The position numbers and the translations under genes are program-made. The notes under the pieces were generated by a model that searched no databases, was not told where the DNA came from, and saw nothing but the letters and a program-made list of their open reading frames with translations. This document shows positions 5,588 through 58,075 of a DNA stretch of 64,000 nucleotides, piece by piece (the stretch's first letter is position 1; each line of letters begins with the position of its first letter). Where the stretch lies: IMG/VR virus record IMGVR_UViG_3300028840_008160, positions 1 through 64,000 of that record. The stretch is one strand, 5' to 3'.

Positions 5588-5589
5588 CT

Positions 5590-6774
5590 ATGCAAGGACC
5601 AATAAGCGCAATCGACAATGATCAGTACAAGTTCTCAATGCAAAATGGTGTTGTGAAGTTGTTTCCTCGCGAAATTGTTCGATACGAGTTTTTTAATCGA
5701 GGCAAACATGAGTTTCCGGATGGATTTGCGAAACTTCTGCGTGAACTAGTAGATATGTATGCTGCTATTACATTTGTCAAAGATGACATCGATTTTTTTA
5801 GAGAAAAAGCTTACTATTTTGATCCTGCATATCATTCGTTTTTACGAGGCTACAGATATGATCCGTCAGAAGTGAAAATCATTCAAGAAGGTTACAATCT
5901 TCAAGTAATTGTGGAGGGCTTATGGCACAAAACAATTCTATGGGAAGTGCCGCTTATGGCATTGATCTGCGAATTGTATTATGAAATGACTAAACAACAA
6001 CCAAAAGACAGAAAAGAACGAGAGCAAATCAACAAAGAGAAAGTTATTGCTCTTACAAAATTGTTAATCAAAGCAGCAGAATTTGGAACAAGACGACGGT
6101 TTTCTTTTATTAATCAAAAAGAGTTTTTAATTGATGCTATAACTTATGGCAATTTTGCTGGACATAAACTTCTTTCTGGAACAAGCAATGTATATTTTGC
6201 ACGTGAACTTGATCTTCTATCAATAGGTACACAAGCTCATGAGTGGTACATGTTTCACGCTGCGAAGTATGGTTTTAGAATGGCTAACTTGCTCGGTATG
6301 GAAAACTGGGTTAAAGTATATAATGGAGATTTGGGAATAGTTCTTCCAGATACATTCACCACTGATGCTTTTCTCAAGTCTTTTAATACAATGTTTGCAA
6401 AGCTGTTCGACGGCAGTAGACAAGATAGTGATTGTCCGTTCGCATACACAGATAAATTTGTCAAACATTATCGTGATTTGAAAATTCCGTCACAACACAA
6501 AACAATTGTTTATTCTGACGGAATAAGCAGTGTTAAAACCGTGAGTGATATCAAGGAATATGCAACAGGAAAAGTGCAAGACGGATATGGTATTGGTACA
6601 TGGTTTACAAACGATGTTGGTCTTAAGCCGATGAATATCGTTATTAAGATGACAGCTGCATTTATAAACGGAGTATGGGTACCTACAATTAAGTTGTCTG
6701 ACGCAGCAACGAAGAATACAGGAGATCAGATTCAAATTGGAATTGCTAAACATGAATTAGGGATAAATGTATGA
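5590..6774 (+). CDS. pncB: Nicotinate phosphoribosyltransferase
   Basis: DNDQYKFSMQ, EFGTRRRFS, GTSN, GTQAHEW (phospho-His motif as in E. coli PncB), DTF, RQDS, GIGT, KLSD. Start placed at ATG 5590 after gagg; the track ORF starts at 5563. Confidence 0.92.
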   Translation: MQGPISAIDNDQYKFSMQNGVVKLFPREIVRYEFFNRGKHEFPDGFAKLLRELVDMYAAITFVKDDIDFFREKAYYFDPAYHSFLRGYRYDPSEVKIIQEGYNLQVIVEGLWHKTILWEVPLMALICELYYEMTKQQPKDRKEREQINKEKVIALTKLLIKAAEFGTRRRFSFINQKEFLIDAITYGNFAGHKLLSGTSNVYFARELDLLSIGTQAHEWYMFHAAKYGFRMANLLGMENWVKVYNGDLGIVLPDTFTTDAFLKSFNTMFAKLFDGSRQDSDCPFAYTDKFVKHYRDLKIPSQHKTIVYSDGISSVKTVSDIKEYATGKVQDGYGIGTWFTNDVGLKPMNIVIKMTAAFINGVWVPTIKLSDAATKNTGDQIQIGIAKHELGINV

Positions 6775-6887
6775 TAGCTTTCATCAGTTTAGTTTTTTTG
6801 TTGATATTATTGACAGACTTGTCAATTACGATAAAGAACATGTAAGAATTAGAATAATAATAGTGGAACAGAATAGGAAAAAAATGT

Positions 6888-7796
6888 ATGGACAACTTGG
6901 TGTATACGACAAAGATTAGTGATAGTGCTTATGCTTATGCAGTAAAGAAAATGCAAAACATTTTTCGTCAGTATTTAATTGATAACAATCGAAAAGCTGT
7001 TGTTATTGGAATGTCGGGTGGTATTGATAGTGCTCTAACTGCAGCTTTGGCTGGGCAAGTATGTGCAGAATTAGAAATACCGCTTGTTGGTAGAAGTCTA
7101 CCAATAATGACGAATAAACCTGATGAAGTAGAACGTGCCGCAAGAGCTGGTAAAATATTTTGTTCTAATTTTGGTGAAAAAGATTTAACTAGTGCATATA
7201 CTGCTTTACACGAATTGATGGATGACATTGATGCTAGCAGTGATGAGCAATTAACTTTGACAGTAAAGATTCGAGAAGGTAATATTAAAGCGCGAACAAG
7301 AATGATATATCTTTATGATCTTGCTAGAAAAAATGATGGATTGGTTTTGTCAACTGATAACTATACAGAATTAATGCTCGGTTTCTGGACACTTCATGGT
7401 GATGTAGGCGATTTTGGATTACTTCAGAATATTTGGAAAACAGAAGTATATGAAATGGCAAGATTTTTATGTCGCGCAGGATTAGATGATGATGCTATTC
7501 AAATACTAAAAGACACTATTACTGCTGTTCCGACAGATGGTTTAGGAATTACAAATAGTGATTTAGATCAGCTTGGAGCAGGCAGCTATGAAGAGGTTGA
7601 CAAAATTTTGATGACATATTTATCTGGTTCAAGAAAAGAATATATGAATCATCCAGTTATCATAAGACATTTGACATCTGTTTATAAGAGAGCGAATCCT
7701 GTTAATATAGCTAGAAAAGATATTCTTCCTTCTGTTTATAAGAGAGCGAATCCTGTTAATATAGCTAGAAAAGATATTCTTCCTTTAACAGCATGA
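6888..7796 (+). CDS. nadE: NH3-dependent NAD+ synthetase
   Basis: PP-loop SGGIDS, GNIKARTRM, TDNYTE, GFWTLHGDVGD, KTEV, PTDGL; no glutaminase domain. Confidence 0.92.
   Translation: MDNLVYTTKISDSAYAYAVKKMQNIFRQYLIDNNRKAVVIGMSGGIDSALTAALAGQVCAELEIPLVGRSLPIMTNKPDEVERAARAGKIFCSNFGEKDLTSAYTALHELMDDIDASSDEQLTLTVKIREGNIKARTRMIYLYDLARKNDGLVLSTDNYTELMLGFWTLHGDVGDFGLLQNIWKTEVYEMARFLCRAGLDDDAIQILKDTITAVPTDGLGITNSDLDQLGAGSYEEVDKILMTYLSGSRKEYMNHPVIIRHLTSVYKRANPVNIARKDILPSVYKRANPVNIARKDILPLTA
7677..7784 (+). repeat. Perfect 54-bp in-frame tandem duplication in the nadE 3' end
   Basis: tctgtttataagagagcgaatcctgttaatatagctagaaaagatattcttcct at 7677-7730 and 7731-7784 (SVYKRANPVNIARKDILP x2). Confidence 0.95.
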
Positions 7797-15060: not shown

Positions 15061-15999
15061 ATGACTAGGATTTTGCAAATTGATGGTGGCGGTGTAAGAG
15101 GAATAATTCCTGCGATTATTTGCGCAGAAATAGAACAAAATGTCGGTCGTCCAATTAATGAAATTTTTGATTTAATCACTGGCACATCTACAGGAGCTGT
15201 AATAGGAGGTTCATTGGCATTTGGCATTGCTGCTACTACAGTTAGAGATTTGTATTTAACGGCTGTGCCAGAGCTATTTAAACGAAGACCGTTGTGGAAT
15301 CCTAAGAATTGGTTTAGAGAGAAGTATGACAGAACAGAGTTTCAAGAACAACTACGAAAATATCTTGGTAATCAAAAAATGTCTCAAGCAAAAACAAAAT
15401 ATATGGCGACAGCTTTTAATTTAAGTTCACAACGTACTCATTTTATTAAATCGTGGGACGACAAAGATAATAGATGGAATATAGTTGATGTCATTTCCTG
15501 GTCTGCTTTATCTGCTGCGTTTTATTTTGGAAAGATCAACGTGCCGAATTATAATTGGACACTTACTAATGCAATGAGTGCCACAGAACAAAAGATAGGA
15601 GCTACATTTCAAGACGGTGGACAGGGCATAAGTAATTGTACATTAGGATTTGATTTAGATGAATGTTTAGCAAATGATTGGCATGACGTGTTTATTTTAT
15701 CTATAGGCACAGGCCAACGTAGTATGTATATTCCTTATAAAAAGACAGCAAAAACCGGTTATATTGCACAAGTTATAGATTATATTTTTCAAGCTAGAAA
15801 TGAAGCGACGCCGACGCAATTTTTAACAGCAAAATATGTTGCCAACAAAAGAGAAGATTATATATTGAGTCGATTAGATGCGAACATTTCAAAGAAACAG
15901 GAACCACTTGATTCTATTAAATATGTTGATGAATACGAAAAAATAGGCAATGAATTAGCAAAGAAGGTGCCATATCAATATTTAAAGTCAATAGTGTAA
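15061..15999 (+). CDS. Patatin-like phospholipase
   Basis: DGGGVRG oxyanion loop, GTSTG nucleophile elbow, SALSAA, DGG, LSIGTG. Confidence 0.88.
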   Translation: MTRILQIDGGGVRGIIPAIICAEIEQNVGRPINEIFDLITGTSTGAVIGGSLAFGIAATTVRDLYLTAVPELFKRRPLWNPKNWFREKYDRTEFQEQLRKYLGNQKMSQAKTKYMATAFNLSSQRTHFIKSWDDKDNRWNIVDVISWSALSAAFYFGKINVPNYNWTLTNAMSATEQKIGATFQDGGQGISNCTLGFDLDECLANDWHDVFILSIGTGQRSMYIPYKKTAKTGYIAQVIDYIFQARNEATPTQFLTAKYVANKREDYILSRLDANISKKQEPLDSIKYVDEYEKIGNELAKKVPYQYLKSIV

Positions 16000-27498: not shown

Positions 27499-28050
27499 AT
27501 GTTCCTGATTATAGAAGGAATTCATGATACAGGAAAGTCTACATTGATTGACAGGTTGTGCTCTAGTAAATTTGCCTTTGCGTTGTTTAAGGCTAAGCGA
27601 TTGATACCACAGTTTGAAGATGCAAAAAATGTTCAAGTATCTGATTTTGCTTTTGGTGTAAATTGTTCAGTTGTATGGTTTGCTAGTCAATTGTCAGAAA
27701 GACATCAAATAGTATTTGATAGATTGCATTTATCTGAATACGCTTATGGTCGAGCAATTCGCAATACTGATAAATTTGATGCAATACGTCGATTTGAAAT
27801 AATTGATCAAACATTGTCGACATTTAATGTTAAGTTAGTTTATTTAGAATGCGATTATGAAATAATACAACAACGACAGAAGAAGAAAAATGTTGTTTAT
27901 AGCAAAATTAGTTACGAAAAACTGACAGAAGCTTTTAATAATGCATTAAAAGTAACTAGATTACCTATATTGAGATTAAACACTGGTGAAAAAAATGAAA
28001 CATTAATATATCAAGAAGTATGCCGATTTTTGGAGGACAAATGCGATTGA
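27499..28050 (+). CDS. dNMP/thymidylate kinase-like P-loop kinase
   Basis: IIEGIHDTGKSTL Walker A and FDRLHLSEYAYG. Confidence 0.75.
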   Translation: MFLIIEGIHDTGKSTLIDRLCSSKFAFALFKAKRLIPQFEDAKNVQVSDFAFGVNCSVVWFASQLSERHQIVFDRLHLSEYAYGRAIRNTDKFDAIRRFEIIDQTLSTFNVKLVYLECDYEIIQQRQKKKNVVYSKISYEKLTEAFNNALKVTRLPILRLNTGEKNETLIYQEVCRFLEDKCD

Positions 28051-29147
28051 CTGCTGAAGAAAAATTAAGACGATATGCTAGAGATATTATTGGTACTACA
28101 GATCCATGTTTAATAACTCTTCAAATAGATTTGACAGATTTTTGCGTTTGTAAATGTAAAGGCTGTGAACATTGGAAATGGCCAGTTAAAACAAAATTTG
28201 ATACTGATGTTGTAATGAAAAACGTATTTCCTTTCCCATATAAAACAGAATCAACATTATTTAACAATCTGCAATCTGTTGTATTATCTGGTGGCGAACC
28301 ATTACTTCATCAAGATGTCGAATCAATTGTAAGTCATATCAACCATAGATATGCTAATGTTGGAATTATAACATCTGGTTTAGGAAAGAACAAGCTAGAT
28401 TGGTTGACTTTATCAAAAAATTGTCGATGGATACGATTTTCAACTGATGGGTTTACACCAGAAAATTATGCAGCAACTCGAGGCGTTAATTTATTTTCAA
28501 CGTGGTTAGACAATTTGCTAACGCTACTTGACGCTAATAAGAAAACAAAATGTCAAACGAGGCTTAATGTAACAATTCATGATTATAATATCAATAATTT
28601 CTCAGATAATTTGATAGATTTTCTTTTAGAGAATAAGCTAAATTTAGATGTTTATTTTTGGCTATCGAGGGAATTTATCGATGTATTGAGACAAGAAGGA
28701 GAAGCATCAATAAATTTGTCATTAAAGCTGCGAAATAAAATAGATGAATTACGAGACGAAGCAAAAACTAAAGGCTATCCAATGAAATTAATTGATGTAG
28801 GCAATGTTTTAAGGCATATGACTGGTCGTGAAGCTAAAAGTTATAAGTCATGTTATGCTGCACAAATGTTTGCTTTAATAGCAGCTGATGGAAATGTATT
28901 TCCGTGCTGCTATATGTACGAACCTGTGTTTGCTGTGGATAAACAGCAAACACAGTTTATTATAGGAAATGTTAATGAACAATCAATATTTGATATTTAT
29001 AATGGTCAACGCTATAAAGATGTTGTAGATAAATTCAGACGATGTAATAAGAAATTTTCTCAATGCGTTTTTTGTGATAGATATGATCATTTAAATGTGT
29101 ATTTAAATCAGTACAGAATTACAGATGATGAGCCAATATTCTTATGA
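28041..29147 (+). CDS. Radical SAM protein with SPASM/twitch domain
   Basis: CVCKCKGC (CxxxCxxC), SGGEPLLH, ADGNVFPCC...IGNV...CVFC; start at ATG 28041 after ggagg. Confidence 0.85.
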   Translation: MRLTAEEKLRRYARDIIGTTDPCLITLQIDLTDFCVCKCKGCEHWKWPVKTKFDTDVVMKNVFPFPYKTESTLFNNLQSVVLSGGEPLLHQDVESIVSHINHRYANVGIITSGLGKNKLDWLTLSKNCRWIRFSTDGFTPENYAATRGVNLFSTWLDNLLTLLDANKKTKCQTRLNVTIHDYNINNFSDNLIDFLLENKLNLDVYFWLSREFIDVLRQEGEASINLSLKLRNKIDELRDEAKTKGYPMKLIDVGNVLRHMTGREAKSYKSCYAAQMFALIAADGNVFPCCYMYEPVFAVDKQQTQFIIGNVNEQSIFDIYNGQRYKDVVDKFRRCNKKFSQCVFCDRYDHLNVYLNQYRITDDEPIFL

Positions 29148-30815: not shown

Positions 30816-32759
30816 ATGGCAAATCAAAGTTCTATATATGACGAACAATCAATTAAAACATTAGATGAACGATCACATGTTCGTCTACGACCAGCAATGT
30901 ATATTGGCGACACTGGAATCTTCGGGTTACATCATTTGGTGTATGAAGTTGTAGATAATAGTATCGATGAAATAACTAATGGTTATGGTAACCTCATTAC
31001 TTGTAGAATTTATAATGATGGTTCAGTGTCTGTCGAAGATAATGGTCGAGGTATTCCTGTAGGTGTTCTTAAAGACAGCAAGAAATCAGCTGCTGAAGTT
31101 ATTATGACATCATTACATTCTGGTGGTAAGTTTGGTAATGACAGTTATAAAACGTCATCAGGTCTTCACGGTATTGGCGTATCAGCTGTAAATTTCTTAT
31201 CCGAAGAATTAGATCTTGTAGTTTGGCGCAATGGATTTGAATGGAAACAATCTTACGCTAAAGGTATACCGACAACTGCAGTTGAAAAAGGTTCAAGCAC
31301 TGATAAGACCGGAACATATGTTAAATTCAAACCCGATCACAAAATTTTTCAGACTGTCGACTTTCAATATAAAATATTGCATGATAGGCTGAAAGAACTA
31401 GCTTATTTGAATAAAGGTGTAAAAATCGTTGTCGTCGATGACAATACAAACGAAAAAGCTGAATTTTATTCAGATGGTGGTATTTCTGCATTTGTAGTCG
31501 ACTTAAATAGCAACAAAGAAACTGTGAGTCCTATCATTTATTTACAAGATGAAGTTCAAGTTAAAAACGAGAATGTTGAAAGCGGACCATATAATGTAAG
31601 TTTTGAAATTGCTATACAATATACAAAAACATATTCTGACATTGTTTATTCATTTGCAAATAATGTCAATACACGTGATGGTGGTACGCATTTAACTGGA
31701 TTTAAAAGTGCGTTGCTTGAAGCTATTGTTAAATATGCAGAACGAAAAAAATTATTTAAAGGCCTGCCGGTTAGACCGACTTCCAGAGATGTGCTAGAAG
31801 GATTGACGGCTGTTATATCTGTGAAACTGCCGAATCCTGAATTTGAAGGGCAAACAAAATCCACATTAGGCAATCCAGAAATCAAACCTATTATTAGAGA
31901 TCAAGCACTCGAAGCAATAACGGATTATTTTGGTAAACATGAATCTATTGCAATGGCAATTGCAGAAAAAGTATCGCAAGCATGCATTGCTAGAGAAGAA
32001 GCTAGAAAAGCAAAAGAAACAGTAAGACGGAAAAACATATTATCTACATTAGGTTCGTTGCCTGGAAAACTAGCTGATTGTTCAGATAAAAACCCAGAAA
32101 CATGCGAACTATTTATTGTTGAAGGTGATAGTGCTGGTGGTAGCAGTAAGCAAGGTCGTAATAGGAATTTTCAAGCAGTGTTACCAGTTAAAGGAAAAGT
32201 ATTGAACGTTGAAAAATGCGAATTGGCAAAAGTACTTGACAATGAAGAAATCAAATCATTGATAGCAGCAATAGGCATCGACATTAAAACTGGTGACATA
32301 TCAAAACTTAGATATGACAAAATCATTATTAGCTGTGATGCTGACGTTGACGGAGCTCACATTTCATCATTGTTATTGACACTGTTTTATCGATTTATGA
32401 AACAATTGGTTGTTGATGGTCATGTTTATTTGGCTCAACCACCATTGTATCGTGCTAAATATGGTAAAGAAGATTACTATATCATGGACGATGAAGAACT
32501 AGCTAAATGGAAAAAGACAGTTAAAAATCCAGAGAAAGCGATTATAACACGGTTTAAAGGTTTAGGAGAAATGAATCCTGAACAATTGTCAATAACAACA
32601 ATGAATCCGCAAACTAGAAAATTGGCAAGAGTTGTTGTAGCTGATGAAGACGAAACTGATCGTATTTATTCTATTCTGATGGGTCGAGATATTAATGCTA
32701 GACGAGAATATATAGTTCAAAATGCATTTATTGTTCATGAAGATGAAATAGATGCATAA
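30816..32759 (+). CDS. gyrB: DNA gyrase subunit B
   Basis: RPAMYIG, EVVDNSIDE, DNGRGIP, GGKF, GLHGIG, EGDSAGGS, PVKGK, DADVDG, RFKGLGEMNP; short form (647 aa). Confidence 0.93.
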   Translation: MANQSSIYDEQSIKTLDERSHVRLRPAMYIGDTGIFGLHHLVYEVVDNSIDEITNGYGNLITCRIYNDGSVSVEDNGRGIPVGVLKDSKKSAAEVIMTSLHSGGKFGNDSYKTSSGLHGIGVSAVNFLSEELDLVVWRNGFEWKQSYAKGIPTTAVEKGSSTDKTGTYVKFKPDHKIFQTVDFQYKILHDRLKELAYLNKGVKIVVVDDNTNEKAEFYSDGGISAFVVDLNSNKETVSPIIYLQDEVQVKNENVESGPYNVSFEIAIQYTKTYSDIVYSFANNVNTRDGGTHLTGFKSALLEAIVKYAERKKLFKGLPVRPTSRDVLEGLTAVISVKLPNPEFEGQTKSTLGNPEIKPIIRDQALEAITDYFGKHESIAMAIAEKVSQACIAREEARKAKETVRRKNILSTLGSLPGKLADCSDKNPETCELFIVEGDSAGGSSKQGRNRNFQAVLPVKGKVLNVEKCELAKVLDNEEIKSLIAAIGIDIKTGDISKLRYDKIIISCDADVDGAHISSLLLTLFYRFMKQLVVDGHVYLAQPPLYRAKYGKEDYYIMDDEELAKWKKTVKNPEKAIITRFKGLGEMNPEQLSITTMNPQTRKLARVVVADEDETDRIYSILMGRDINARREYIVQNAFIVHEDEIDA

Positions 32760-32770
32760 AAGGAGTAAGC

Positions 32771-35700
32771 ATGGCTGATGATGACAATGACATTGTAAAT
32801 GAAGATGAAGACGAAGATATTGTATGTGAAAACGAAGTTGTAAGTGAAGAAGGACAATTTGATGTCAAATCGCACGAAGTGTTGCCGAAGATGTATTTGG
32901 CTTATGCGCTAAGTGCAATTAAAGACAGATCATTACCTGATATACGTGACGGACTAAAACCTGTCGCGAGACGTATTTTGTTCGGAATGCATGAAATGAG
33001 TTTGACTCATTCTAAGCCAACTAGAAAAAGCGCAAGAGTCGTTGGTGAAGTCATGGGCAAATATCATCCTCACGGAGATGGGTGTTGGAGAGGCTCTGCC
33101 AACGTTCTTGAACTCAATGGTAAAATTCATCGTTTAAAAGACCTTGTAGGCAAGCAGATTTGGGTATTGGCTCATGATACAGAGAACAACAAGCCGGTCC
33201 CAGCAATTGCTCATTCATTTAGAATTACAAAGTTTGTCGATGAATTGTATCGTGTGACATTTTGGAATGGTGAAAAGATCGAATTGACAGACAATCATGA
33301 ATTGGAAAAATTATCAGGTGAATGGTCCAGGACTGATGCTTTGAATGTTGGTGATATAATCACTAATGGAATTATCACTAACAACGAATATCCTAAATTT
33401 AGAAGTTCAAATGAACGTATGTCAATAGGAAAGAAACTTCATCATATTGTTGGTGAACATATTCATGGTGAAGCTGAAATTTATCATCATAAAGACGAGA
33501 ATACGAAGAATAATTTGCCTGACAATATTGAACCGGTGACAAAGATCGCTCATGAAAAGCTTCATAAGAATTATGAAAAAGGTCTACGAAAAGGTAATGA
33601 AACTATGTTTCATGGTATCGATGAATTTCGTGAAGCTACAAGAAAGAAAAACTCTGAGATTATTAAAGCAGTGAATCAAAAACATTATCTTTTTAAAGCA
33701 ATTAAGATTCTTAAGATGATGATTGAAGATGATGTAGAACTTACAGAAGAAGTTTATAATAACTATCGAGTAAAAGTATATAATGGTACAACTCTAGAAC
33801 GACTTAAGATAAATGGCCATACTTTTGATGAGGTTGCTGGATATGCCAAGTCAAAAGAGAAACTTAGACTAATTGATACTTCATTAGCAAAAGGTCACAT
33901 TGAAAGTCTTAAAGTTGAAGAAAATAATGCTGATGAACATGTTTCAAGACAAAGTAATGATTCAAGAAAAAAAGGTCATTTACTCTATACGTCTTCAATA
34001 GTAGTTAGTGCATGCCTTGAAAATTATGGTTTAAATTTTAATATCAAAGACTATGATGATATTAGATGCGATTTGTGTGAAACAGATGACAATAATTTTT
34101 ATCCAAAATTTGAAACATTGACAAAATGGTTTGGGATAACTACAATCAATCAATTATTGGATTTAATGTCTCAACGAAATTTAATGATAATTAAGAAGAT
34201 TGAGACATTCAATGTTGATCATGAGCCTGTATATGATTTTACTGTAGATAAATATGAAAATATGTATATGCCTGTTGGCACGAATGAAAGAAACGAAACG
34301 AAACTAATTGTTGCTCATAATTCAATCTATGGTGCAGCGGTGAGGTTGGCACAACCTTTTACTACACGTTATCCGCTTATCATTGGTCAAGGAAATTTTG
34401 GGTCAGTTGAAGATAAACCGGCTGCAATGAGATACACAGAAATGAAAATGTCAGCAATATCAGATATGGTTGTTGCTGATATTGATAAAGCGACAGTTGA
34501 TTTTATGCCCAATTTTGATGGCACACTTAATGAACCCAAAGTTTTGCCGACAAGACTACCGTTGTTTTTATTGAATGGTTCTGTTGGTATTGCTGTTGGT
34601 ATGGCAACTTCTGCGCCGCCTCATAATTTGACGGAAATTATCGATGCTATGTTGACTTTCATTGATAATGAAGACGTCTCAATCTCTGAATTGATGCAAT
34701 ATTTAAAAGGACCTGATTTTCCATCTGGTGCATATATGTTTGACAACGGAATTCGTCAAATATATGAAACAGGTCGAGGGTCTGTAACTATAAGAGCGAA
34801 AGCTGAAATTGTTGATAACGGTAAAAGACAGAACATCATCATTACTGAATTGCCGTATCAATTAGACAAGTCTAAGTTAATCACTAGAATTGCTGATCTT
34901 TATAAGAAGAAAGAGAAGATTGAAGGTATTGATGGCATATCAGATATCAGAGATGAAAGTGATAAGCATGGTACGAGACTAGTAGTTGAATTACGACGCG
35001 GTGTTAGAGCCAAGGCTGTTTTAAACACATTGTTTCGGCGTACTGAATTACAAACAAAACAATCTTTTTTGATGCGAGCGTTGATCGACAATGTTCCAAA
35101 ACTTGTAACGCTTAAAGAAATTTTTGGTCATTTTGTCAATCATAGAAAAGATGTTATCACGAGACGAACTGAGTTTGAATTGAATCAAGCAGAAAAGAAA
35201 GCTCATATATTGCGCGGATATTTAGTAGTTTTTGATAATTTGGATGCAATTCTTGAAGATGTCAAAACTTCTAAGTCAACTGAGATGACATATAAACGTT
35301 TGCAGAAATATAAATTATCTGATGAACAAATCAAGGCAATTTTGGATTTACGCGTGCAACGTCTCGCTCAATTTGAGCGCGAAGCTATTGTGACTGAACA
35401 TAGTGAACTAATGACTAAGATTCACGGATTGAAGCAGTTACTAGATTCGGAAGTTTTAGTATTAGAAAAAATCAAAGAGGAATTGGCAGAAATTAGACAA
35501 CAATTTGGTGATGCTCGTAAAACTAAAATTATCAAAACCAGATCTAGATCAAACTCTGATGATGACGATGATAATAAAGAAGAAAGTTTAGATACAAGTG
35601 ATGAAACAATTGATGAGATTGAGGAGATTCAGGAGGAAGACGTTGTTGTTACTGTAACTCATAATGGATTGGTTAAACGGACGCCGGTGTCAGAATATCG

Positions 35701-36613
35701 TGTGCAGAACGTACGTGGTAAGGGTTTGATTGGAGTTGATGTTAAAGAAGAAGATTATGTTGAAAAAGTATTTCAATTATCAACGCATGATTATACATTA
35801 GTTTTTACTAATAAGGGTCATTGTTATAAAATGAATGTATTTGAGATACCGTCATTAGGCAGAACAGCTGCAGGAAGTTCAATACTCAATGTTCTTAACC
35901 TTAATGAAGATGAAATTGTTGCTAGTGTAGTACCAATTACTAATTTGCAGGACAAAATGTTTTTGATGGTTACAAGAAAAGGTCAAGTCAAAAAATTGAA
36001 AGCTGAAAAGTTGCAACGCCCACGAGCTAAAGGTACAAAAGTTGTTGGACTTGATGACAACGACGTTCTTATTGATGTTAAACTTATAGATCAGCCACAT
36101 TTGGATGCTTTGTTAGTGACGAGAAAAGGTATTTCAATACGATTTCCTGAAAGTGCTGTAAGAGCATCCGGTAAAAGTGGTTCAGGCGTTAGGGCAATCA
36201 AATTAGCTGATGATGATTGTATTGTTTCGGTAAATATGATATCTGAAGCTGACAATGAATGTTTTGTGATGCTAGTTACTGAACGAGGTTATTCTAAAAA
36301 GACTATATTACGCAAGTTTAGAACTCAACGTCGAGGTGGTCGCGGGATCATTTGTATGGATGCTAACACAACTGTTGGCAAAATTGTTTCGGCTGGTATT
36401 GTGTTAGACGAGAAAGAACAATTCATTGTTATGACAAGTCAAGGCATGCTTATACGATTGAAATCGGCTCAAATAAGAACATTAGGACGAAATACTCAAG
36501 GTAGTCGAATACAAAAACTAAAAATGACTGATTCAGTAGCTGCAGTTGCATATTTAGGAATTGTTGAAGAAAACGAATCTGACTCTGAACAATCTGAAGT
36601 CGAGGATGAATAA
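32771..36613 (+). CDS. gyrA: DNA gyrase subunit A, intein-containing
   Basis: RDGLKPV, YHPHGD, GQGNFGS, AAMRYTE catalytic Tyr, GIAVGMAT, beta-pinwheel CTD with QNVRGKG and QRRGGRG, acidic tail. Confidence 0.93.
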   Translation: MADDDNDIVNEDEDEDIVCENEVVSEEGQFDVKSHEVLPKMYLAYALSAIKDRSLPDIRDGLKPVARRILFGMHEMSLTHSKPTRKSARVVGEVMGKYHPHGDGCWRGSANVLELNGKIHRLKDLVGKQIWVLAHDTENNKPVPAIAHSFRITKFVDELYRVTFWNGEKIELTDNHELEKLSGEWSRTDALNVGDIITNGIITNNEYPKFRSSNERMSIGKKLHHIVGEHIHGEAEIYHHKDENTKNNLPDNIEPVTKIAHEKLHKNYEKGLRKGNETMFHGIDEFREATRKKNSEIIKAVNQKHYLFKAIKILKMMIEDDVELTEEVYNNYRVKVYNGTTLERLKINGHTFDEVAGYAKSKEKLRLIDTSLAKGHIESLKVEENNADEHVSRQSNDSRKKGHLLYTSSIVVSACLENYGLNFNIKDYDDIRCDLCETDDNNFYPKFETLTKWFGITTINQLLDLMSQRNLMIIKKIETFNVDHEPVYDFTVDKYENMYMPVGTNERNETKLIVAHNSIYGAAVRLAQPFTTRYPLIIGQGNFGSVEDKPAAMRYTEMKMSAISDMVVADIDKATVDFMPNFDGTLNEPKVLPTRLPLFLLNGSVGIAVGMATSAPPHNLTEIIDAMLTFIDNEDVSISELMQYLKGPDFPSGAYMFDNGIRQIYETGRGSVTIRAKAEIVDNGKRQNIIITELPYQLDKSKLITRIADLYKKKEKIEGIDGISDIRDESDKHGTRLVVELRRGVRAKAVLNTLFRRTELQTKQSFLMRALIDNVPKLVTLKEIFGHFVNHRKDVITRRTEFELNQAEKKAHILRGYLVVFDNLDAILEDVKTSKSTEMTYKRLQKYKLSDEQIKAILDLRVQRLAQFEREAIVTEHSELMTKIHGLKQLLDSEVLVLEKIKEELAEIRQQFGDARKTKIIKTRSRSNSDDDDDNKEESLDTSDETIDEIEEIQEEDVVVTVTHNGLVKRTPVSEYRVQNVRGKGLIGVDVKEEDYVEKVFQLSTHDYTLVFTNKGHCYKMNVFEIPSLGRTAAGSSILNVLNLNEDEIVASVVPITNLQDKMFLMVTRKGQVKKLKAEKLQRPRAKGTKVVGLDDNDVLIDVKLIDQPHLDALLVTRKGISIRFPESAVRASGKSGSGVRAIKLADDDCIVSVNMISEADNECFVMLVTERGYSKKTILRKFRTQRRGGRGIICMDANTTVGKIVSAGIVLDEKEQFIVMTSQGMLIRLKSAQIRTLGRNTQGSRIQKLKMTDSVAAVAYLGIVEENESDSEQSEVEDE
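33083..34321 (+). mobile_element. Intein (413 aa) with HNH homing endonuclease in gyrA
   Basis: Begins CWRGSA after HPHGDG; block B LTDNHE; block F VYDFTVDKYEN; ends IVAHN followed by Ser; internal HHKDENTKNNLPDNIE...H. Removing it restores HPHGDGSIYGAAVRLAQ. Confidence 0.92.
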
Positions 36614-38634
36614 TGTCAACACTTGTAATTGTAGAAAGTCCCGGCAAAGTTAAGACTATTCAAAAATATCTTGGCCGTGATTATATAGTTAAAGCATCGG
36701 TAGGTCATTGTTACCAGATTGAACCAAAGGATAATGCGATTGATATAGATAATCATTTTGCACCGAAGTATGTGATCATACCGAAAAAGAAAAAGGTTGT
36801 TGCTGAAATAAAAACATTAGCTAAGACAGCAGACAAATGTTTAATCGCATCAGATCCTGATAGAGAAGGCGAAGCAATTGGTTGGCATATTGCAAAAAAT
36901 GCTATACGAAATGCTTGTCTTGTCCAACGAATATCGTTTCAAGAAATAACAAAACAAGCTGTACTGGCAGCTCTTAGACAACCTCGTGAACTTGATACAA
37001 ATTTGTTTAATGCGCAACAAGCAAGAGCTGTATTAGACAGATTAGTCGGTTATAAAGTGTCGCCAGTACTTTGGCGAAAAGTTTGTCGCGGAACATCGGC
37101 TGGACGGGTTCAATCAATTGGACTACGTTTGATTGTGGAGCGGCAACAAGAAATTGATAGTTTCAAACCTGAAGAATATTGGGATATCATTGCAAAATTT
37201 TCAACAATAATTGATAAGGCTGAAGTATTTTCTGCTACTTACAAGAGTGACGAGAAGTTAATTTCAGAGGATCAAGTTAATAAGATATTGGATTCTATTG
37301 GCCAGTCAAAGAAATGGCACATGAAGTCTCTATCCAAGGCTAGAAAGAAACGATCGCCATATCCTATATTTAACACTTCGTCATTGCAGCAATTTTGTTC
37401 TTCGTCTTTTAATTGGGATGGAAAAAAGACGATGAAAATAGCACAATCTTTATACGAAGGGTTTGCTGTAGGTGATAATGAAACAACAGGATTGATAACT
37501 TATCATAGAACAGACTCATTGAATATAAGTTCTGAAGCAATTTCAGCTGTTCGTGATTTGATTAAGCAGGCAGGGAAAAAGTATTTGCCGGATGAACCTA
37601 GAATTTTTAAGTCAAAGAAAACAGCTCAAGAAGCTCATGAAGGTATTAGACCAACACATTTGGAATTTACATTAGATGATATTAGACGAAGTTTGCCAAA
37701 TGATGAATATAAGCTTTATGAAGCAATTTATTACAGATTTATTGCTTGCCAGACGACAGATGCCGAGTTAGACGTTACAAAAATGACTATTGACTCAGAT
37801 AACAATCATACATTTATAGCTAATGGACAAGTTTTGGTATTTGATGGTTATTTAAAATATTGGCCATATTCATCGGCTAAAGAAGAGATATTACCGTTAG
37901 TTAATGAAGGTGATGCAGTCAAATTGAAAGAAGTAAATGGTAATCAACACTTCACAAAGCCGCCGGCAGCTTTTAATACTGCATCATTGGTTAAGACGTT
38001 GGAAGAAAAGGGTATAGGTAGACCGTCTACATATGCAACAATAGTAGACACACTGCTAAAGCGAGGCTATGTTGAAAAGAAAGGGAAAGCATTCGCACCT
38101 ACAGAACTAGGATGTCGTGTGTCAGCATTTCTAGTGAAGGCTTTTCCGGAAGTTATGGATACTAATTATACAGCTAGAATTGAAACACAACTTGATGAAA
38201 TTGCAGAACATGGAAAAATTTGGTATGCAGTAGTTGATGAATTCTTTACTGAATTGTCAAAAAGATTAAGTACTGCTAAAGACATTATTAGCAAAAAAGG
38301 TGAAGTGACAGACATTATGTGTCCTACTTGCAAACAATATAAACTAGTGAAACGATTCGGCAAATTTGGAATGTTTTACGGTTGTGAAGGTTTTAAAGAA
38401 AAAGGTAGCAATCAGTGTAAGGCAACATTTAATATAGGCGCTGATGGTGAGCCATTGGCAAAAGAAAAGAAAATAGTTAAATATTTAGAGGGAGTTGTTT
38501 GTGATAGGTGCGGAGCACCAATTGTTATTAGAAAAGCCAAACGATCCGGAAAAGAATTCGGTGGTTGTTCGTCATGGCCAAAATGTCATAGAATTTTTAC
38601 ACTTGATGGTAAACCTGTCGATCACAATCGTTAA
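36613..38634 (+). CDS. topA: Type IA DNA topoisomerase I
   Basis: VIVESPGK, ASVGH, DPDREGE, SAGRVQ, GLITYHRTDS (catalytic Tyr), AQEAHEGIRPT, GIGRPSTY, C-terminal Zn ribbons. Confidence 0.94.
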   Translation: MSTLVIVESPGKVKTIQKYLGRDYIVKASVGHCYQIEPKDNAIDIDNHFAPKYVIIPKKKKVVAEIKTLAKTADKCLIASDPDREGEAIGWHIAKNAIRNACLVQRISFQEITKQAVLAALRQPRELDTNLFNAQQARAVLDRLVGYKVSPVLWRKVCRGTSAGRVQSIGLRLIVERQQEIDSFKPEEYWDIIAKFSTIIDKAEVFSATYKSDEKLISEDQVNKILDSIGQSKKWHMKSLSKARKKRSPYPIFNTSSLQQFCSSSFNWDGKKTMKIAQSLYEGFAVGDNETTGLITYHRTDSLNISSEAISAVRDLIKQAGKKYLPDEPRIFKSKKTAQEAHEGIRPTHLEFTLDDIRRSLPNDEYKLYEAIYYRFIACQTTDAELDVTKMTIDSDNNHTFIANGQVLVFDGYLKYWPYSSAKEEILPLVNEGDAVKLKEVNGNQHFTKPPAAFNTASLVKTLEEKGIGRPSTYATIVDTLLKRGYVEKKGKAFAPTELGCRVSAFLVKAFPEVMDTNYTARIETQLDEIAEHGKIWYAVVDEFFTELSKRLSTAKDIISKKGEVTDIMCPTCKQYKLVKRFGKFGMFYGCEGFKEKGSNQCKATFNIGADGEPLAKEKKIVKYLEGVVCDRCGAPIVIRKAKRSGKEFGGCSSWPKCHRIFTLDGKPVDHNR

Positions 38635-39391
38635 TCTTGTACTCTCCGTTGTCAAAATAAATAATTTTTTGATGATATAATTGCACAGCACAATTTATTA
38701 ATGAATTGTGCGCTTTTACATGCTCTTTGCGCGTTAACAAACATAAATTATTTATTGAGTTGTCAAACTTGTTACCATTAATATGATGAACATATTCATC
38801 GTTTTCATTACTTTTTAATGTTCTTCCTAAAAAACACTCCATAACTAATTTGTGATACCCTTTAAATTTGTGACGTTTGATTTGTATTTTTGGACGGCCA
38901 TGTTTTATAGAAATTTTATTTGAGTATTCAGGAAATATTATTGTCGGTTCATTGAGCATTATACTTGGCGTTTGATGCAGCACATATACGCTCTGTGATC
39001 TGTCAAACCAAACAAGTTTGTTTAACATTTTTAGACTCAAATATTCTAAACTGATTGTTAATTTTCTGTGTTGTGATGGATTCGCACACACATATAAATT
39101 GTCTATATGATTGTTTAATTTATTAAAATCAATATGATGTATTGATTCTGTAGCTGTCAGCTTTCTGTCTAAATGTTGTTCAACAACAAACCTGTGTTCT
39201 TGTTTTCGTTTGCCGTTTATTTTAACTCGCCGATATCCTGCTGTGCTGAGTCCGTGTTTATAATTGCCATGATTTTTACCTGACGGTATAGTACGTTGTT
39301 GCTGTGAGCATTTCCAACAACGATTTTGTTTGCGTTTATACTTACATTTCACTTCTCGCGGTCGTCCGCAGATGTCGCAAATTTTAATCAT
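38597..39391 (-). mobile_element. Free-standing homing endonuclease with two HNH domains
   Basis: N-terminal CDIC/CWKC; EHRFVVE...HHIDFNKLNNHIDNL...H and YHKLVME...HHINGNKFDNSINNL...H; antisense, overlaps the topA 3' end. Confidence 0.8.
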
Positions 39392-40733: not shown

Positions 40734-41138
40734 ATGCCTACGTATGATTTTATTTGTAATGAATGCGAACAAGAATATGAAGAAAATCGACCTGTTGGTG
40801 ATTATGATTCAAAATGTCCAGTTTGCAACAGCACAAATGTTAAAAAATTAATTTCTGCACCAAATGTTATACTTAGTGGTTCGACGCCGGATTCGATTAT
40901 TGGGCGAGATGCTGAGCAACGATGGGCACAATACACTGAAAGAAAAAAACAACGAGATAAAAACAATTTTGGTAATGCATCAAGTAAGGAAGTAGAAATT
41001 AAAAATCAACAACGAATTGGTCGACTTGTAGATAGACAACATAAAGCTTATGATGTTTTAGACAAAGCAAAGAAAAAAGCAGGTGTGACTAAACGAGAGG
41101 AAATAAGTTATTTGTTGAAAGGGCAAAACAATGTATAA
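40734..41138 (+). CDS. FmdB-family zinc-ribbon protein (second copy)
   Basis: MPTYDFICNEC...CPVCNS...KKLISAP. Confidence 0.78.
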   Translation: MPTYDFICNECEQEYEENRPVGDYDSKCPVCNSTNVKKLISAPNVILSGSTPDSIIGRDAEQRWAQYTERKKQRDKNNFGNASSKEVEIKNQQRIGRLVDRQHKAYDVLDKAKKKAGVTKREEISYLLKGQNNV

Positions 41139-42402
41139 GATAATGATTTCTTGTAAATTAGCAAGTATGCTGCGAGGAGGTTTTCAAAAGCAAGCGGCAG
41201 CTTGGGATGATCTTTCATATGATGCACAAGCCGAATACTTGAAAAATCATCCAGGGTCAAAAAAACGTATAACAAAACGACCAGGTGAAGGTGGCAAAAG
41301 TTTAAAAGATTATGATAGAATGTCTGTGCCTGAAATTCAGGCTGCAATTAAAGAATATCAAATGACAAAATCACCTAGATCGTTTAAAGCATTATATAAG
41401 AATTTTCTTCCTATGGTGTTGAACACTGTAAAGCGTGTTATTGGGCCTAGACAAGTATCAAAGGATGACGTCGAAGATTTGAAACAAGATGCAAACATAA
41501 TTTTTGTTAGAGCATTATCGAATGCTGATCCGGCAAATCAAGGCGTTATTAAATACTTTCAAGACACTTTGCAAAAACAATTAGAAGGAAAATCGCGCGA
41601 TATATTTAGACCGACAGTTACAATTGGGCCGAAAGACAAGCGACTTTTACGTGCTGTAAGACGATATTTACATGAGCAAAAAGGTAATAAGCCAATTGAT
41701 TATGCAGATATGGCTAGAGCTATTAATAGTGATCCAACGAATAGAATTACTCATGCTACGCCTGAACTTATTACTAGTTTATTGCAAACTCCAGGTGTAT
41801 CATTAGAAGAAGAAGTTGGCGGTGAGGGCGAAAGTAAACGAAAAATTCATGATGTTTTGGGGCCGTCAGGAGTGTTAGATACTGATGACAGATCGTATAT
41901 AGAGACACCAGAAGAAGAAACAATACAACAAGATATAAAGAACGTCGTGTCAAAGAGCATAGAAGCATTAGACAATCCTTTGAGACGAAAGTTATTGAAA
42001 CTTAAATTTGGTTTAGAGCCAATTAAAGTAAGATTGAAGCCGACAAAAGAGTACCCTGAAGGTCAGATAGTTCTTGCTCAAGGTAAACAATTGGATGTAA
42101 AAGATATTGCTAAAATCGTCAATCTGTCGAGATCAACTGTTAGACGTGAACTTGAAAAAGCAATGGTTCAGATGAGAAGAATGCAAGACATTCAAAGATT
42201 GGATAAGTCATCTAAGTCTGCTATGCGAATAATTAAAGCATTTGATGGTCATATTAGATTTGAATATCAGCCTCAATCTATTAGCAAAGTAGGGCACACT
42301 TATATTATTGATGGTATTGTTGTAAAGAAATTTGGTAGTCAATTGGTTTGTAATTGTGGTAAGACAAATTGTTTTCATAAGGACGCTGTTAAAAACATTT
42401 GA
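41131..42402 (+). CDS. Sigma-70-family RNA polymerase sigma factor with N-terminal tag and C-terminal Cys/His motif
   Basis: Region 2 LYKNFLPMV...DVEDLKQDANIIFVRAL..ADP; region 3 SLEEEVGGEG; region 4 LKFGL...DIAKIVNLSRSTVRRELEKAM; tail CNCGKTNCFH. Confidence 0.75.
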   Translation: MYKIMISCKLASMLRGGFQKQAAAWDDLSYDAQAEYLKNHPGSKKRITKRPGEGGKSLKDYDRMSVPEIQAAIKEYQMTKSPRSFKALYKNFLPMVLNTVKRVIGPRQVSKDDVEDLKQDANIIFVRALSNADPANQGVIKYFQDTLQKQLEGKSRDIFRPTVTIGPKDKRLLRAVRRYLHEQKGNKPIDYADMARAINSDPTNRITHATPELITSLLQTPGVSLEEEVGGEGESKRKIHDVLGPSGVLDTDDRSYIETPEEETIQQDIKNVVSKSIEALDNPLRRKLLKLKFGLEPIKVRLKPTKEYPEGQIVLAQGKQLDVKDIAKIVNLSRSTVRRELEKAMVQMRRMQDIQRLDKSSKSAMRIIKAFDGHIRFEYQPQSISKVGHTYIIDGIVVKKFGSQLVCNCGKTNCFHKDAVKNI

Positions 42403-57016: not shown

Positions 57017-58075
57017 ATGGCTAGAAGTCGCGATTATTATGCCGTACTAGGTGTGTCTAGAGATGCTACGGAAGATCAAATAAAAAAGGCTTATCGAAAA
57101 TTAGCGATTAGATATCATCCAGATAAATGTAAAGATGATAAATCAGCTGAAGAAAAGTTTCGAGAAGTCAGTGAGGCTTATACTGTTTTAGTTGACACAA
57201 AGAAAAGAGCTATGTATGACGGGCATGGTCAAAGGATTAATATAGATTTGAGTGATTTATTTAGACAAGGCTCATTTAGTAATGTGTTTACGTCTACTGA
57301 TGGAAATGCATTTTTTAGAAACACAGTAAAAACTAATTCAAGAGGAGATCGCGGTCAAGATATTCGAATAACAATGGAAATAACATTGGAAGATGTTTTA
57401 AGAGGTACAAAGAAAACTATAAAATATAAACGATATGAAAAGTGCGCAGATTGTAATGGAAGAGGCACTTCTAGTGGTGAAAGAATAACTTGTGAAAAAT
57501 GTAAAGGGACTGGTAAAACGACTACTAGCGGTAATTTTGGAGGGTTTAGGTTTGATAGTACAAGTGTATGCGACGATTGTCATGGTCAAGGTAAATCTAT
57601 AAAATTTGATTGTCAAACATGTAATGGAACAGGTCGTGTACTTAAAGATTCTATTATTCCTGTAACAATTAATCGGGGAGTTCAAGAGCACACATCAATT
57701 ACAATGAAATACTACGGTCATCAAGGTGAAAGAAATGGTGTTGCTGGTAATTTGCAAATTAAATTTAGATTAATACCTCATAAATTATTTAAACGTTATA
57801 TTAACGATGTCGTTTATGACGCACATATATCATTAACAACAGCAGTTTTTGGCGGGACAATTTCTGTTCAAACACTGCACGGAAATGATGTCGACATTGA
57901 CATACCAAAAGGATCAAACACAGGTGACAAAAAAGTTTTGGTGGGTCATGGACTACCAGATTTTACATCTGGCAAACCAGGAAATCAGATTGTGAATTTT
58001 ATAATTGATCTGCCAAAGACATTAACTGATGAACAAACTAAATTGTTGAATTTATTGAAAGCAGAGGGATTATGA
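57017..58075 (+). CDS. dnaJ: Type I DnaJ chaperone
   Basis: DYYAVLGV, HPD, four CxxCxGxG repeats, C-terminal substrate-binding domain. Confidence 0.92.
   Translation: MARSRDYYAVLGVSRDATEDQIKKAYRKLAIRYHPDKCKDDKSAEEKFREVSEAYTVLVDTKKRAMYDGHGQRINIDLSDLFRQGSFSNVFTSTDGNAFFRNTVKTNSRGDRGQDIRITMEITLEDVLRGTKKTIKYKRYEKCADCNGRGTSSGERITCEKCKGTGKTTTSGNFGGFRFDSTSVCDDCHGQGKSIKFDCQTCNGTGRVLKDSIIPVTINRGVQEHTSITMKYYGHQGERNGVAGNLQIKFRLIPHKLFKRYINDVVYDAHISLTTAVFGGTISVQTLHGNDVDIDIPKGSNTGDKKVLVGHGLPDFTSGKPGNQIVNFIIDLPKTLTDEQTKLLNLLKAEGL

What the first reader, a model, noticed from the sequence alone, without database searches (positions are those of the whole stretch)
33083..34321. HNH-type intein inserted in the GyrA quinolone-resistance helix
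Seen: a 413-aa intein (C...HN/S) splits HPHGDG|SIYG, between the residues equivalent to E. coli 83 and 84, about 40 residues before the intact AAMRYTE. It carries an HNH motif, and I see no LAGLIDADG motif. Established: the well-known mycobacterial GyrA inteins insert right after the catalytic Tyr. Inference: a different, possibly uncatalogued insertion site that makes gyrase activity depend on splicing.
Basis: partly seen in the sequence, partly recalled or inferred. Interest (0 to 1): 0.6.

Follow-up and report, generated by a model that had tools for sequence, protein, structure and literature searches.

The report
HNH intein in phage GyrA helix
A jumbo phage's DNA gyrase A gene carries a self-splicing protein insert (an intein with an HNH homing nuclease) inside the DNA-contacting "quinolone" helix, which is a different site from the textbook GyrA intein; it is one member of a large, so far unnamed family of such inserts seen only in environmental sequences.

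Summary
Window 33083-34321 (+) encodes a 413-aa class-1 intein: Cys1, block B TDNH, block F VYDFTVD, terminal His-Asn, +1 Ser. It sits in frame in gyrA (32771-36613) between residues equal to E. coli Ser83 and Ala84, 38 residues before the catalytic Tyr. Removing it restores HPHGDG|SIYG, exactly as read in syntenic intein-free alleles of related phages.

It carries an HNH (beta-beta-alpha-metal) nuclease plus two helical, possibly HTH-like, modules. It has no LAGLIDADG motif.

The host genome is a tailed jumbo phage of at least 330 kb, from sediment and seawater metagenomes, with at least four inteins.

The intein looks active:
- dN/dS is well below 1 in every part.
- Intein+ and intein- alleles interleave on the extein tree.
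- One pair of inteins is much younger than its exteins.

It is not a one-off. An exhaustive protein search found at least 67 clusters (50% identity) of topoisomerase-II A subunits with homologous HNH inteins at the HPHGD motif. Most sit one codon upstream (82|83), a few at 83|84 and one at 84|85. None came from a named organism. I found no paper or curated model for this site.

Verdict: a real, ordinary-mechanism intein at an apparently undescribed but environmentally common GyrA site. Interest is moderate.

The parts
32771..36613 (+). gyrA precursor ORF (1280 aa; 867-aa GyrA after removal of the intein)
   Evidence: PF00521, six GyrA C-terminal blades, NF004043 at 902.8 bits (cut-off 902), TIGR01063 at 883.4 bits (cut-off 877)
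32771..33082 (+). N-extein (aa 1-104), ending ...GKYHPHGDG; the -1 residue Gly104 equals E. coli Ser83
33083..34321 (+). intein, 413 aa (precursor aa 105-517)
33083..33406 (+). Hint N-lobe (intein aa 1-108). Block A is Cys1 (33083-33085). Block B is TDNH, T69/H72 (33287-33298).
   Evidence: C1, T69 and H72 are invariant in 32 homologues; Foldseek matches mini-inteins at probability 1.0
33473..33565 (+). HNH beta-beta-alpha-metal nuclease core (intein aa 131-161). H135/H136, N144/N148 and H157/H161 are conserved.
33569..34180 (+). helical part of the endonuclease insert (intein aa 163-366). Two three-helix modules weakly resemble HTH DNA-binding domains.
   Evidence: VIA Z up to 6.5 to TetR-type HTH; weak. 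dN/dS is 0.11-0.31.
34181..34321 (+). Hint C-lobe (intein aa 367-413). Block F is VYDFTVD (34229-34249). Block G is TKLIVAHN (34298-34321).
   Evidence: D385, H412 and N413 are invariant
34322..36610 (+). C-extein (aa 518-1280). The +1 Ser518 codon TCA (34322-34324) equals E. coli Ala84. The catalytic Tyr555 codon is 34433-34435.
30816..32759 (+). gyrB, uninterrupted here (647 aa), immediately upstream
   Evidence: syntenic loci
36613..38634 (+). topA (type IA topoisomerase), immediately downstream

Best explanation
This is a canonical class-1 intein with a nested HNH homing endonuclease. It lives in the gyrA gene of an uncultured tailed jumbo phage.

Protein level (inferred from standard intein chemistry). 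The 1280-aa precursor folds. Cys1 makes a thioester with Gly104, helped by block B Thr69/His72. The +1 Ser518 hydroxyl takes over the N-extein. Asn413 cyclises, helped by His412 and block F Asp385, and releases the intein. An O-to-N shift then leaves a normal Gly-Ser bond. The product is an 867-aa GyrA whose helix alpha-4 reads HPHGDGSIYG. The insert splits the DNA-contacting helix of the winged-helix domain next to the DNA gate, so the unspliced precursor is very likely inactive.

DNA level (inferred). The HNH nuclease, aided by its helical DNA-binding modules, cuts or nicks intein-free gyrA alleles of related phages during co-infection. Recombinational repair then copies the intein in. This keeps the element sporadically distributed across the phage clade.

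Shown here: the anatomy, the conserved catalytic residues, the Hint fold, purifying selection, intein-free alleles, the patchy distribution, and a signal of recent transfer.

Not shown: splicing, and DNA cleavage.
For: Anatomy and clean insertion:
- Pfam and translations place the intein with nothing lost from GyrA.
- Intein-free syntenic alleles read HPHGDG|SIYG. These are L007/L008 and L010, which share the gene order radical-SAM/UDG/Zn-ribbon/gyrB/gyrA/topA.

Conserved residues and fold:
- C1, T69, H72, H136, N148, H161, D385, H412 and N413 are invariant across 32 homologues that go down to about 28% identity.
- The AF2 model has pLDDT 89.4. The Hint lobes match solved mini-inteins (Ssp DnaB, Mtu RecA, Npu DnaB) at Foldseek probability 1.0.
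- hhalign of the HNH region against a free-standing phage HNH endonuclease gives probability 92%.

Selection and mobility:
- dN/dS is 0.03-0.17 in the Hint lobes, 0.07-0.28 in HNH and 0.11-0.31 in the helical part.
- For L014 versus L015, intein dS is 0.11-0.52 while extein dS is 0.8-2.2.
- On the extein tree, intein+ and intein- alleles are sisters: P0006/P0013 at 99 and P0009/P0021 at 99. At least 4 gains or losses are forced.
- 90%-identity clusters mix intein+ and intein- members: 1224 vs 811 aa, and 1132 vs 740 aa.

Genome context:
- The window encodes TerL, portal and prohead protease, so this is a tailed phage.
- The genome holds at least three more inteins.
Against: - No experiment exists: neither splicing nor nuclease activity has been observed.
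- Pfam HNH_3 is below its gathering score for this protein (21 vs 24.8 bits).
- dS is saturated (above 1, or undefined) in most pairs, so the ratios are rough.
- The public contigs of the two runs that hold the phage show no intein-free variant with the exact borders. Contigs cannot show rare variants, though.
- GC3 of the intein (0.225) equals that of its neighbours. It has therefore been resident in this lineage for a long time rather than arriving recently.
Confidence: 0.85

Rival explanations
1. A splicing-competent intein whose HNH domain no longer homes. It would be inherited only vertically and lost occasionally by precise deletion, and the helical and HNH parts would be conserved only because they are needed for folding and splicing.
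For: GC3 equals that of the neighbours. The six close inteins form one clade. Only five close clusters are known. No intein-free allele with exact borders is seen in the same samples.
Against: The HNH catalytic triad is invariant over a family at about 30% identity. dN/dS in HNH is as low as in the Hint lobes. For L014-L015, intein dS is several-fold below extein dS. At least 4 gain or loss events are forced, with intein+/intein- sister pairs. Precise loss of an intein from an essential gene is itself rare without an intein-free donor.
Confidence: 0.1
2. A domesticated, conditional splicing switch. Under this reading the phage uses the intein to delay or gate gyrase activity, for example by redox state, temperature or DNA binding, so the element is kept for regulation rather than as a parasite.
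For: The position is in a functionally critical helix. Intein clustering in replication proteins has been argued to have functional importance (PMC4760082). The genome carries inteins in RtcB and DnaE as well.
Against: Close relatives do without the intein. No regulatory feature, such as a redox-trap cysteine pair at the junction, is conserved. The patchy distribution fits a selfish element.
Confidence: 0.04
3. Not an intein: a permanent domain insertion (a nuclease domain fused into GyrA), or an artefact of assembly.
For: None beyond the absence of experimental splicing data.
Against: All splice-junction residues and the Hint fold are present. The same structure appears in five independent metagenome contigs. 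The stretch is held at 100% identity in single long contigs of two runs. A 413-aa insertion inside helix alpha-4 would destroy the DNA gate.
Confidence: 0.01

Closest known systems
Mycobacterial GyrA inteins (Mxe/Mle GyrA; NCBIfam NF038098) and the GyrA intein of Staphylococcus jumbo phages MarsHill, Madawaska and DC4
   Same: Class-1 inteins in gyrase subunit A, placed in the breakage-reunion domain close to the active site. In the Staphylococcus case the host is also a jumbo phage.
   Different: Those sit directly after the catalytic Tyr (Y117|T in MarsHill; NF038098 resumes at our T556). Where an endonuclease is present it is LAGLIDADG. This one sits 38 residues upstream at E. coli 83|84 and carries HNH. 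NF038098 scores 656 against a cut-off of 1850.
HNH_3-type inteins of GyrB and dCTP deaminase (cluster 22 of the His-Me finger classification, PMC5714182; HNH intein first noted by Dalgaard et al. 1997, cited in PMC5050341)
   Same: Same architecture: Hint N-lobe, then a PF13392-like HNH, then helical modules, then the Hint C-lobe. The only cultured-phage hit of this intein is the dCTP deaminase intein of Aphanizomenon phage CL131.
   Different: The extein and insertion site differ. Sequence similarity is marginal (31% over 36% of the query, E 5e-4).
Unnamed metagenomic family of HNH inteins at the HPHGD motif of type IIA topoisomerase A subunits (found here)
   Same: Full-length homologues at 28-35% identity over all 413 aa, HNH included, at the same motif. 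Presence/absence polymorphism occurs within 90% clusters.
   Different: 62 of 67 representatives are inserted one codon upstream (HPHGD|C...HN|S, E. coli 82|83). Most are in short, T4 gp52-like A subunits of about 440-540 aa. The window's clade is at 83|84 in a full-length GyrA with a C-terminal beta-pinwheel.
Free-standing phage HNH homing endonucleases (PF13392; PHROG HNH endonucleases)
   Same: The HNH core is homologous: hhalign gives 92% probability to the gene at window 38597-39391(-).
   Different: Those are separate genes. This one is nested in a Hint domain and is excised at the protein level.

Membership tests
Intein (class 1, Hint fold) | In-frame insertion that is absent from orthologues, whose removal restores the conserved host sequence | tested here: met
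   Intein-free syntenic alleles read HPHGDG|SIYG. PF00521 profile positions 1-50 and 52-431 flank the insert.
Intein (class 1, Hint fold) | N-terminal Cys/Ser; block B TxxH; block F Asp; C-terminal His-Asn; +1 Ser/Thr/Cys | tested here: met
   C1, T69, H72, D385, H412, N413 and +1 Ser are present. All are invariant in 32 homologues.
Intein (class 1, Hint fold) | Hint fold, with a family-model score above threshold | tested here: met
   PF14890 scores 43.9 bits against 35.8. The AF2 model has pLDDT 89.4, and Foldseek matches solved mini-inteins at probability 1.0.
Intein (class 1, Hint fold) | Protein splicing observed | not testable with these tools
   No expression or proteome data. The runs that hold it are DNA contigs only.
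HNH / His-Me finger homing endonuclease (PF13392 HNH_3) | Score at or above the Pfam gathering threshold | tested here: not met
   21.0 bits against 24.8 for this protein. The homologue P0009 and the P0284 cluster carry precomputed (weak) PF13392 hits.
HNH / His-Me finger homing endonuclease (PF13392 HNH_3) | Beta-beta-alpha-metal core with a catalytic His, an Asn and a metal-binding His/Asn | tested here: met
   Strands at aa 133-136 and 149-152, helix at aa 154-161. H136, N148 and H161 are invariant. hhalign to a PHROG-confirmed HNH endonuclease gives probability 92.4%, E 5e-7.
HNH / His-Me finger homing endonuclease (PF13392 HNH_3) | Site-specific cleavage of the intein-free allele | not testable with these tools
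   Indirect only: patchy distribution and an intein younger than its exteins.
Classical GyrA intein allele (after the catalytic Tyr; NF038098) | Insertion between the catalytic Tyr and the following Thr | tested here: not met
   AAMRY555-T556 is intact. The insertion lies 38 residues upstream, at E. coli 83|84.
Classical GyrA intein allele (after the catalytic Tyr; NF038098) | NF038098 score at or above the cut-off; LAGLIDADG endonuclease | tested here: not met
   656 bits against 1850. No LAGLIDADG family or motif.
DNA gyrase subunit A (TIGR01063 / NF004043) | Equivalog score at or above the cut-off; catalytic Tyr; C-terminal beta-pinwheel | tested here: met
   NF004043 scores 902.8 against 902, and TIGR01063 scores 883.4 against 877, both on the precursor. 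Y555 equals E. coli Y122. There are six PF03989 blades.

The most novel reading that the evidence does not exclude
The window's intein may represent an undescribed, widespread lineage of HNH inteins specialised on the HPHGD motif (start of helix alpha-4) of type IIA topoisomerase A subunits, carried mainly by uncultured large phages. In this lineage the splice junction appears to have moved between three adjacent codons (82|83, 83|84, 84|85), apparently several times. The junction seems to follow wherever the target offers a Ser/Thr/Cys nucleophile. That would be a natural case of inteins re-seating themselves by single codons.
Probability: 0.35. Interest if true: 0.55.

Novelty: new variant of a known kind. 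Interest (0 to 1): 0.4.

Why it matters
- It adds a second, structurally distinct intein site in gyrase A. The site is inside the DNA-binding and drug-binding helix rather than at the catalytic tyrosine. It also shows that this site is a hot spot in environmental phages.
- The family offers many natural HNH-type inteins with Gly/Asp at -1 and Ser at +1. That is of practical interest for protein-engineering toolkits and as a source of new site-specific nucleases.
- The one-codon junction shifts among homologous inteins give a tractable system for asking how inteins acquire new insertion sites.
- The mechanism itself is ordinary, so nothing here changes how inteins or gyrases are thought to work.

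Tried and rejected
Searches that gave nothing useful:
- Word search with the intein alone was blank because of the tool's length window. It was repeated on the precursor with a region.
- Megablast of 8 kb against cultured phages found no match.
- tblastn of the intein found only a marginal dCTP-deaminase intein hit.
- PDB sequence search found nothing.
- Foldseek of the endonuclease insert alone found nothing at E<=0.001. VIA-wide gave only weak TetR-like HTH matches (Z up to 6.5), which I treat as a hint.

Pattern scans:
- A GTDB scan for GKYHPHGDxC gave three hits. Two have a natural Cys84 (HPHGDSC) and one reads HPHGDQC in a high-GC gyrA that I read only in one frame, with no intein-length insert. 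None is an intein. The scan covers only that sequence context.
- IMG/VR scans for the exact site gave nothing. The scan for HPHGD|CL gave three contigs.

Read laying:
- No joint was found at the exact intein borders.
- One low-depth joint runs 33080>34417 with a 22-nt side. I take it for another organism's gyrA, not an intein-free allele.

Literature:
- Nothing for 'HPHGD'+intein or for QRDR+intein.
- PMC147097 is not held.
- The supplement of PMC4760082 is not held.

Readings rejected:
- LAGLIDADG intein: no motif or family.
- Group I intron: the ORF is continuous and the Hint fold is present.
- BIL or hedgehog-type Hint: the insert has a terminal His-Asn plus a +1 Ser, and clean intein-free alleles exist.

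Not done or handled locally:
The exteins were searched separately by reference. Joined exteins were used only inside local scripts, for residue numbering and the extein tree.

Full report
**1. What is there**

The ORF at window 32771-36613 (+) encodes a 1280-aa protein. Residues 105-517 (nt 33083-34321) form a 413-aa block that begins with Cys and ends in His-Asn, and Ser follows it.

Pfam finds Intein_splicing above its gathering score (43.9 vs 35.8 bits). The GyrA domain PF00521 is split cleanly, with profile positions 1-50 before the block and 52-431 after it. Six GyrA C-terminal blades follow. NCBIfam calls the precursor a gyrA equivalog.

I fetched E. coli K-12 gyrA and aligned it. Gly104 equals Ser83, Ser518 equals Ala84, and Tyr555 equals the catalytic Tyr122. 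The AAMRYTE motif is intact, with its Tyr 38 residues after the junction.

**2. It is a real intein**

Syntenic contigs from other metagenomes carry gyrA without these 413 codons. They share the gene order radical-SAM/SPASM, UDG, Zn-ribbon, gyrB, gyrA, topA. They read HPHGDG|SIYG across the site.

Five other contigs carry the intein at the same place, at 60-77% identity.

In an alignment of 32 homologues reaching down to about 28% identity, the invariant residues are these:
- C1
- T69 and H72 (block B, TDNH)
- D385 (block F, VYDFTVD)
- H412 and N413 (block G)
- H136, N148 and H161

An AlphaFold2 model built on that alignment has mean pLDDT 89.4. Its two beta-rich lobes match solved mini-inteins (Ssp DnaB, Mtu RecA, Npu DnaB and others) at Foldseek probability 1.0.

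**3. The endonuclease**

No LAGLIDADG family or motif is present.

The insert between the Hint lobes is intein aa 109-366. It starts with a beta-beta-alpha element at aa 133-161 that carries the invariant H136, N148 and H161.

The evidence for HNH is as follows:
- Pfam HNH_3 matches there, but below threshold (21 vs 24.8 bits).
- A profile of the family aligns to the window's own free-standing HNH endonuclease gene (38597-39391, minus strand). PHROGs confirms that gene as an HNH endonuclease. hhalign gives probability 92.4%, E 5e-7.

The rest of the insert is helical. Folded alone (pLDDT 88.2), it has no significant Foldseek match. Two three-helix modules weakly resemble TetR-type HTH domains (Z up to 6.5). 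I read that only as a hint of DNA-binding modules.

HNH_3-type inteins are a known kind. They are recorded in GyrB and in dCTP deaminase (PMC5714182). The only cultured-phage hit of this intein is such a dCTP deaminase intein.

**4. Genome context**

The window is the first 64 kb of a 329.8-kb IMG/VR virus record. It encodes the following:
- large terminase, portal and prohead protease
- NAD-salvage enzymes, patatin, radical-SAM, DnaJ, a sigma-like protein, gyrB and topA

This is therefore an uncultured tailed jumbo phage. Sediment and seawater metagenome runs hold the stretch at 100% identity.

The genome has at least three further inteins, in RtcB and DnaE.

**5. Signs that the element is active**

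I ran a Nei-Gojobori analysis on five intein-bearing alleles.

| Region | dN/dS |
|---|---|
| Hint lobes | 0.03-0.17 |
| HNH segment | 0.07-0.28 |
| Helical part | 0.11-0.31 |
| Exteins | 0.04-0.25 |

Many dS values are saturated, so the ratios are rough. The whole intein is nevertheless clearly under purifying selection.

For the pair L014/L015, the intein's dS is 0.11 in Hint-N and 0.41-0.52 elsewhere. That is several-fold lower than the exteins' dS (0.8, 1.6 and 2.2). This fits a more recent transfer of the intein than the divergence of the host genes.

On an extein-only tree, intein+ and intein- alleles are interleaved. Well-supported sister pairs include P0006/P0013 and P0009/P0021, both at 99. 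At least four changes are forced (this is the quick IQ-TREE search, since the careful one did not finish).

GC3 of the intein equals that of its neighbours, so it is not a recent arrival from a compositionally different source.

The two runs' contigs show no intein-free variant at the exact borders. Contigs cannot show minority alleles.

**6. How unusual is the site?**

The classical GyrA intein lies right after the catalytic Tyr:
- NF038098 resumes its extein at our T556 and scores far below its cut-off.
- The GyrA inteins of Staphylococcus jumbo phages are at Y117|T and carry LAGLIDADG.

So the site here is different.

It is not unique, however. An exhaustive phmmer search of 1.84 billion cluster representatives with the intein alone gave 785 hits at E<=0.001 and 36 at E<=1e-30. 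Among the best 149 hits, 69 are topoisomerase-II A subunits with a Cys within three residues after HPHGD. The C-terminal junction could be located in 67 of them:

| Junction (E. coli numbering) | Representatives | Ids |
|---|---|---|
| 82\|83 (HPHGD\|C...HN\|S/T/C) | 62 | |
| 83\|84, as here | 4 | P0136, P0145, P0155, P0170 |
| 84\|85 | 1 | P0131 |

Many align over all 413 residues, HNH included, at 28-35% identity. Most host proteins are short (about 440-540 aa without the intein), like phage gp52-type subunits.

Other observations on the family:
- One 83|84-site intein lies on a contig with ClpP, ClpX, RecJ and FTHFS, so it is probably cellular. Its 90% cluster contains both 1224-aa and 811-aa members.
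- Another cluster mixes 1132-aa and 740-aa members.
- An IMG/VR 287-kb contig has both an HPHGD-site HNH intein and a classical Tyr-site LAGLIDADG intein in one gene.
- In a FastTree of 53 full-length inteins, the window's clade is monophyletic (100) and nested among 82|83 inteins. The other shifted-junction inteins are scattered. Deep support is weak.

None of the 20 clusters looked up, and no word-search hit, carries an organism name or an intein annotation. A pattern scan of 185,579 GTDB species genomes for GKYHPHGDxC found no intein: two hits have a natural Cys84, and the third shows no intein-length insert.

Full-text searches found no paper describing an intein at this motif or in the QRDR. 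InBase, and the supplementary site tables of the bacterial GyrA intein survey (50 GyrA inteins in four phyla), could not be consulted. So 'uncatalogued' remains likely but unproven.

**7. Mechanism and verdict**

The best explanation is a standard class-1 intein that splices after translation to give an 867-aa GyrA. Its HNH nuclease spreads it among intein-free alleles of related phages. The position inside helix alpha-4 makes dependence of gyrase activity on splicing very plausible, but that is an inference.

The finding is a new variant of a known kind: a new site and a new extein/endonuclease combination, belonging to a large unnamed environmental family. The mechanism is ordinary and the interest is moderate.

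The exteins were searched separately by reference, and joined exteins were used only in local scripts.

Noticed in passing
G000:C1:148010-150496 (locus L005:1011-3497): An RtcB-like RNA ligase gene in the same phage carries its own intein (GVDIG|CFIKS...FVHN|CGM), with an HNH-like motif directly after the Hint N-lobe. The architecture matches the GyrA intein, but the two are only distantly related (23% identity over 192 aa).
   Followed up: partly
G000:C1:190502-196636 (locus L006:503-6637): DnaE (Pol III alpha) is encoded in three consecutive ORFs. ORF 1 (636 aa) ends in an intein N-part after GAGRG|CFLPE. ORF 2 (423 aa) overlaps it by 26 nt in another frame. It holds a DUF7487/PD-(D/E)XK-like region, then an intein C-part (IVVHN|SAAGS), then more DnaE. 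ORF 3 (993 aa) holds a further complete mini-intein (FQFE|CVHGD...FIVHN|SALMK). This is either a naturally split intein or a frameshift.
   Followed up: partly
window 38597-39391 (-): A free-standing HNH endonuclease gene with two HNH_3-like stretches lies on the opposite strand, directly downstream of topA. A homologous HNH_3 gene sits at the same place in the intein-free relative L007 (9990-10802).
   Followed up: partly
L009/L010:6484-9991; L016:221-2985; L017:3278-5989: In several related phage contigs gyrB is split into a 543-545-aa part and a 256-257-aa part. The parts are separated by an intervening stretch, with a 343-aa ORF in L009/L010 and small ORFs in L016/L017. In the window gyrB is uninterrupted (647 aa). 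This is probably a group I intron or a homing-endonuclease insertion.
   Followed up: no
L019 (IMGVR_UViG_3300036770_004723, 287 kb), translated: One topoisomerase-II A-subunit gene carries two inteins. The first is a shortened HNH intein at HPHGD|C. The second is a LAGLIDADG intein at the classical AAAQRY|C site.
   Followed up: partly
window 33080-33082 and 34331-34333 (precursor G104 and G521): After splicing, the phage GyrA would have Gly at both E. coli positions 83 and 87. In E. coli these are Ser83 and Asp87, the residues that anchor the fluoroquinolone water-metal bridge (my own knowledge, not tested here). All close relatives share HPHGDGSIYG/S.
   Followed up: no
L010 (GCA_030650065.1, JAUSEY010000306.1, 102.9 kb): A contig deposited in a 'Nitrosarchaeum sp.' MAG has the same gene order as this phage: radical-SAM, UDG, gyrB, gyrA, topA, a sigma-like gene, a TerL-like gene. 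It is therefore probably a phage contig binned into an archaeal MAG, and it says little about the host.
   Followed up: partly
window 33047-33079 in runs X1 and X2 (record 3): A 22.8-kb contig with an ordinary cellular-type gyrA (HPHGD then T-A-V-Y-D-T-L-V-R-M) matches only the conserved 33 nt here. Its depth (67.7) is almost the same as the phage contig's (66.6). IMG/VR labels the record 'provirus'. This may be a coincidence or a hint at the host.
   Followed up: no
window 5563-7796, 15061-15999, 28020-29147, 41131-42402, 57017-58075: Auxiliary genes are typical of huge phages: nicotinate phosphoribosyltransferase, NAD synthase, patatin-like phospholipase, radical-SAM/SPASM enzyme, a protein with a weak (below-cut-off) match to sigma-70 region 4, and a full DnaJ.
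   Followed up: no
L007/L008 junction: The intein-free alleles L007/L008 use AGT for the Ser at the insertion point. All five intein-bearing alleles and the intein-free L010 use TCN. The three-base difference sits exactly at the presumed homing site and might affect recognition by the nuclease.
   Followed up: no
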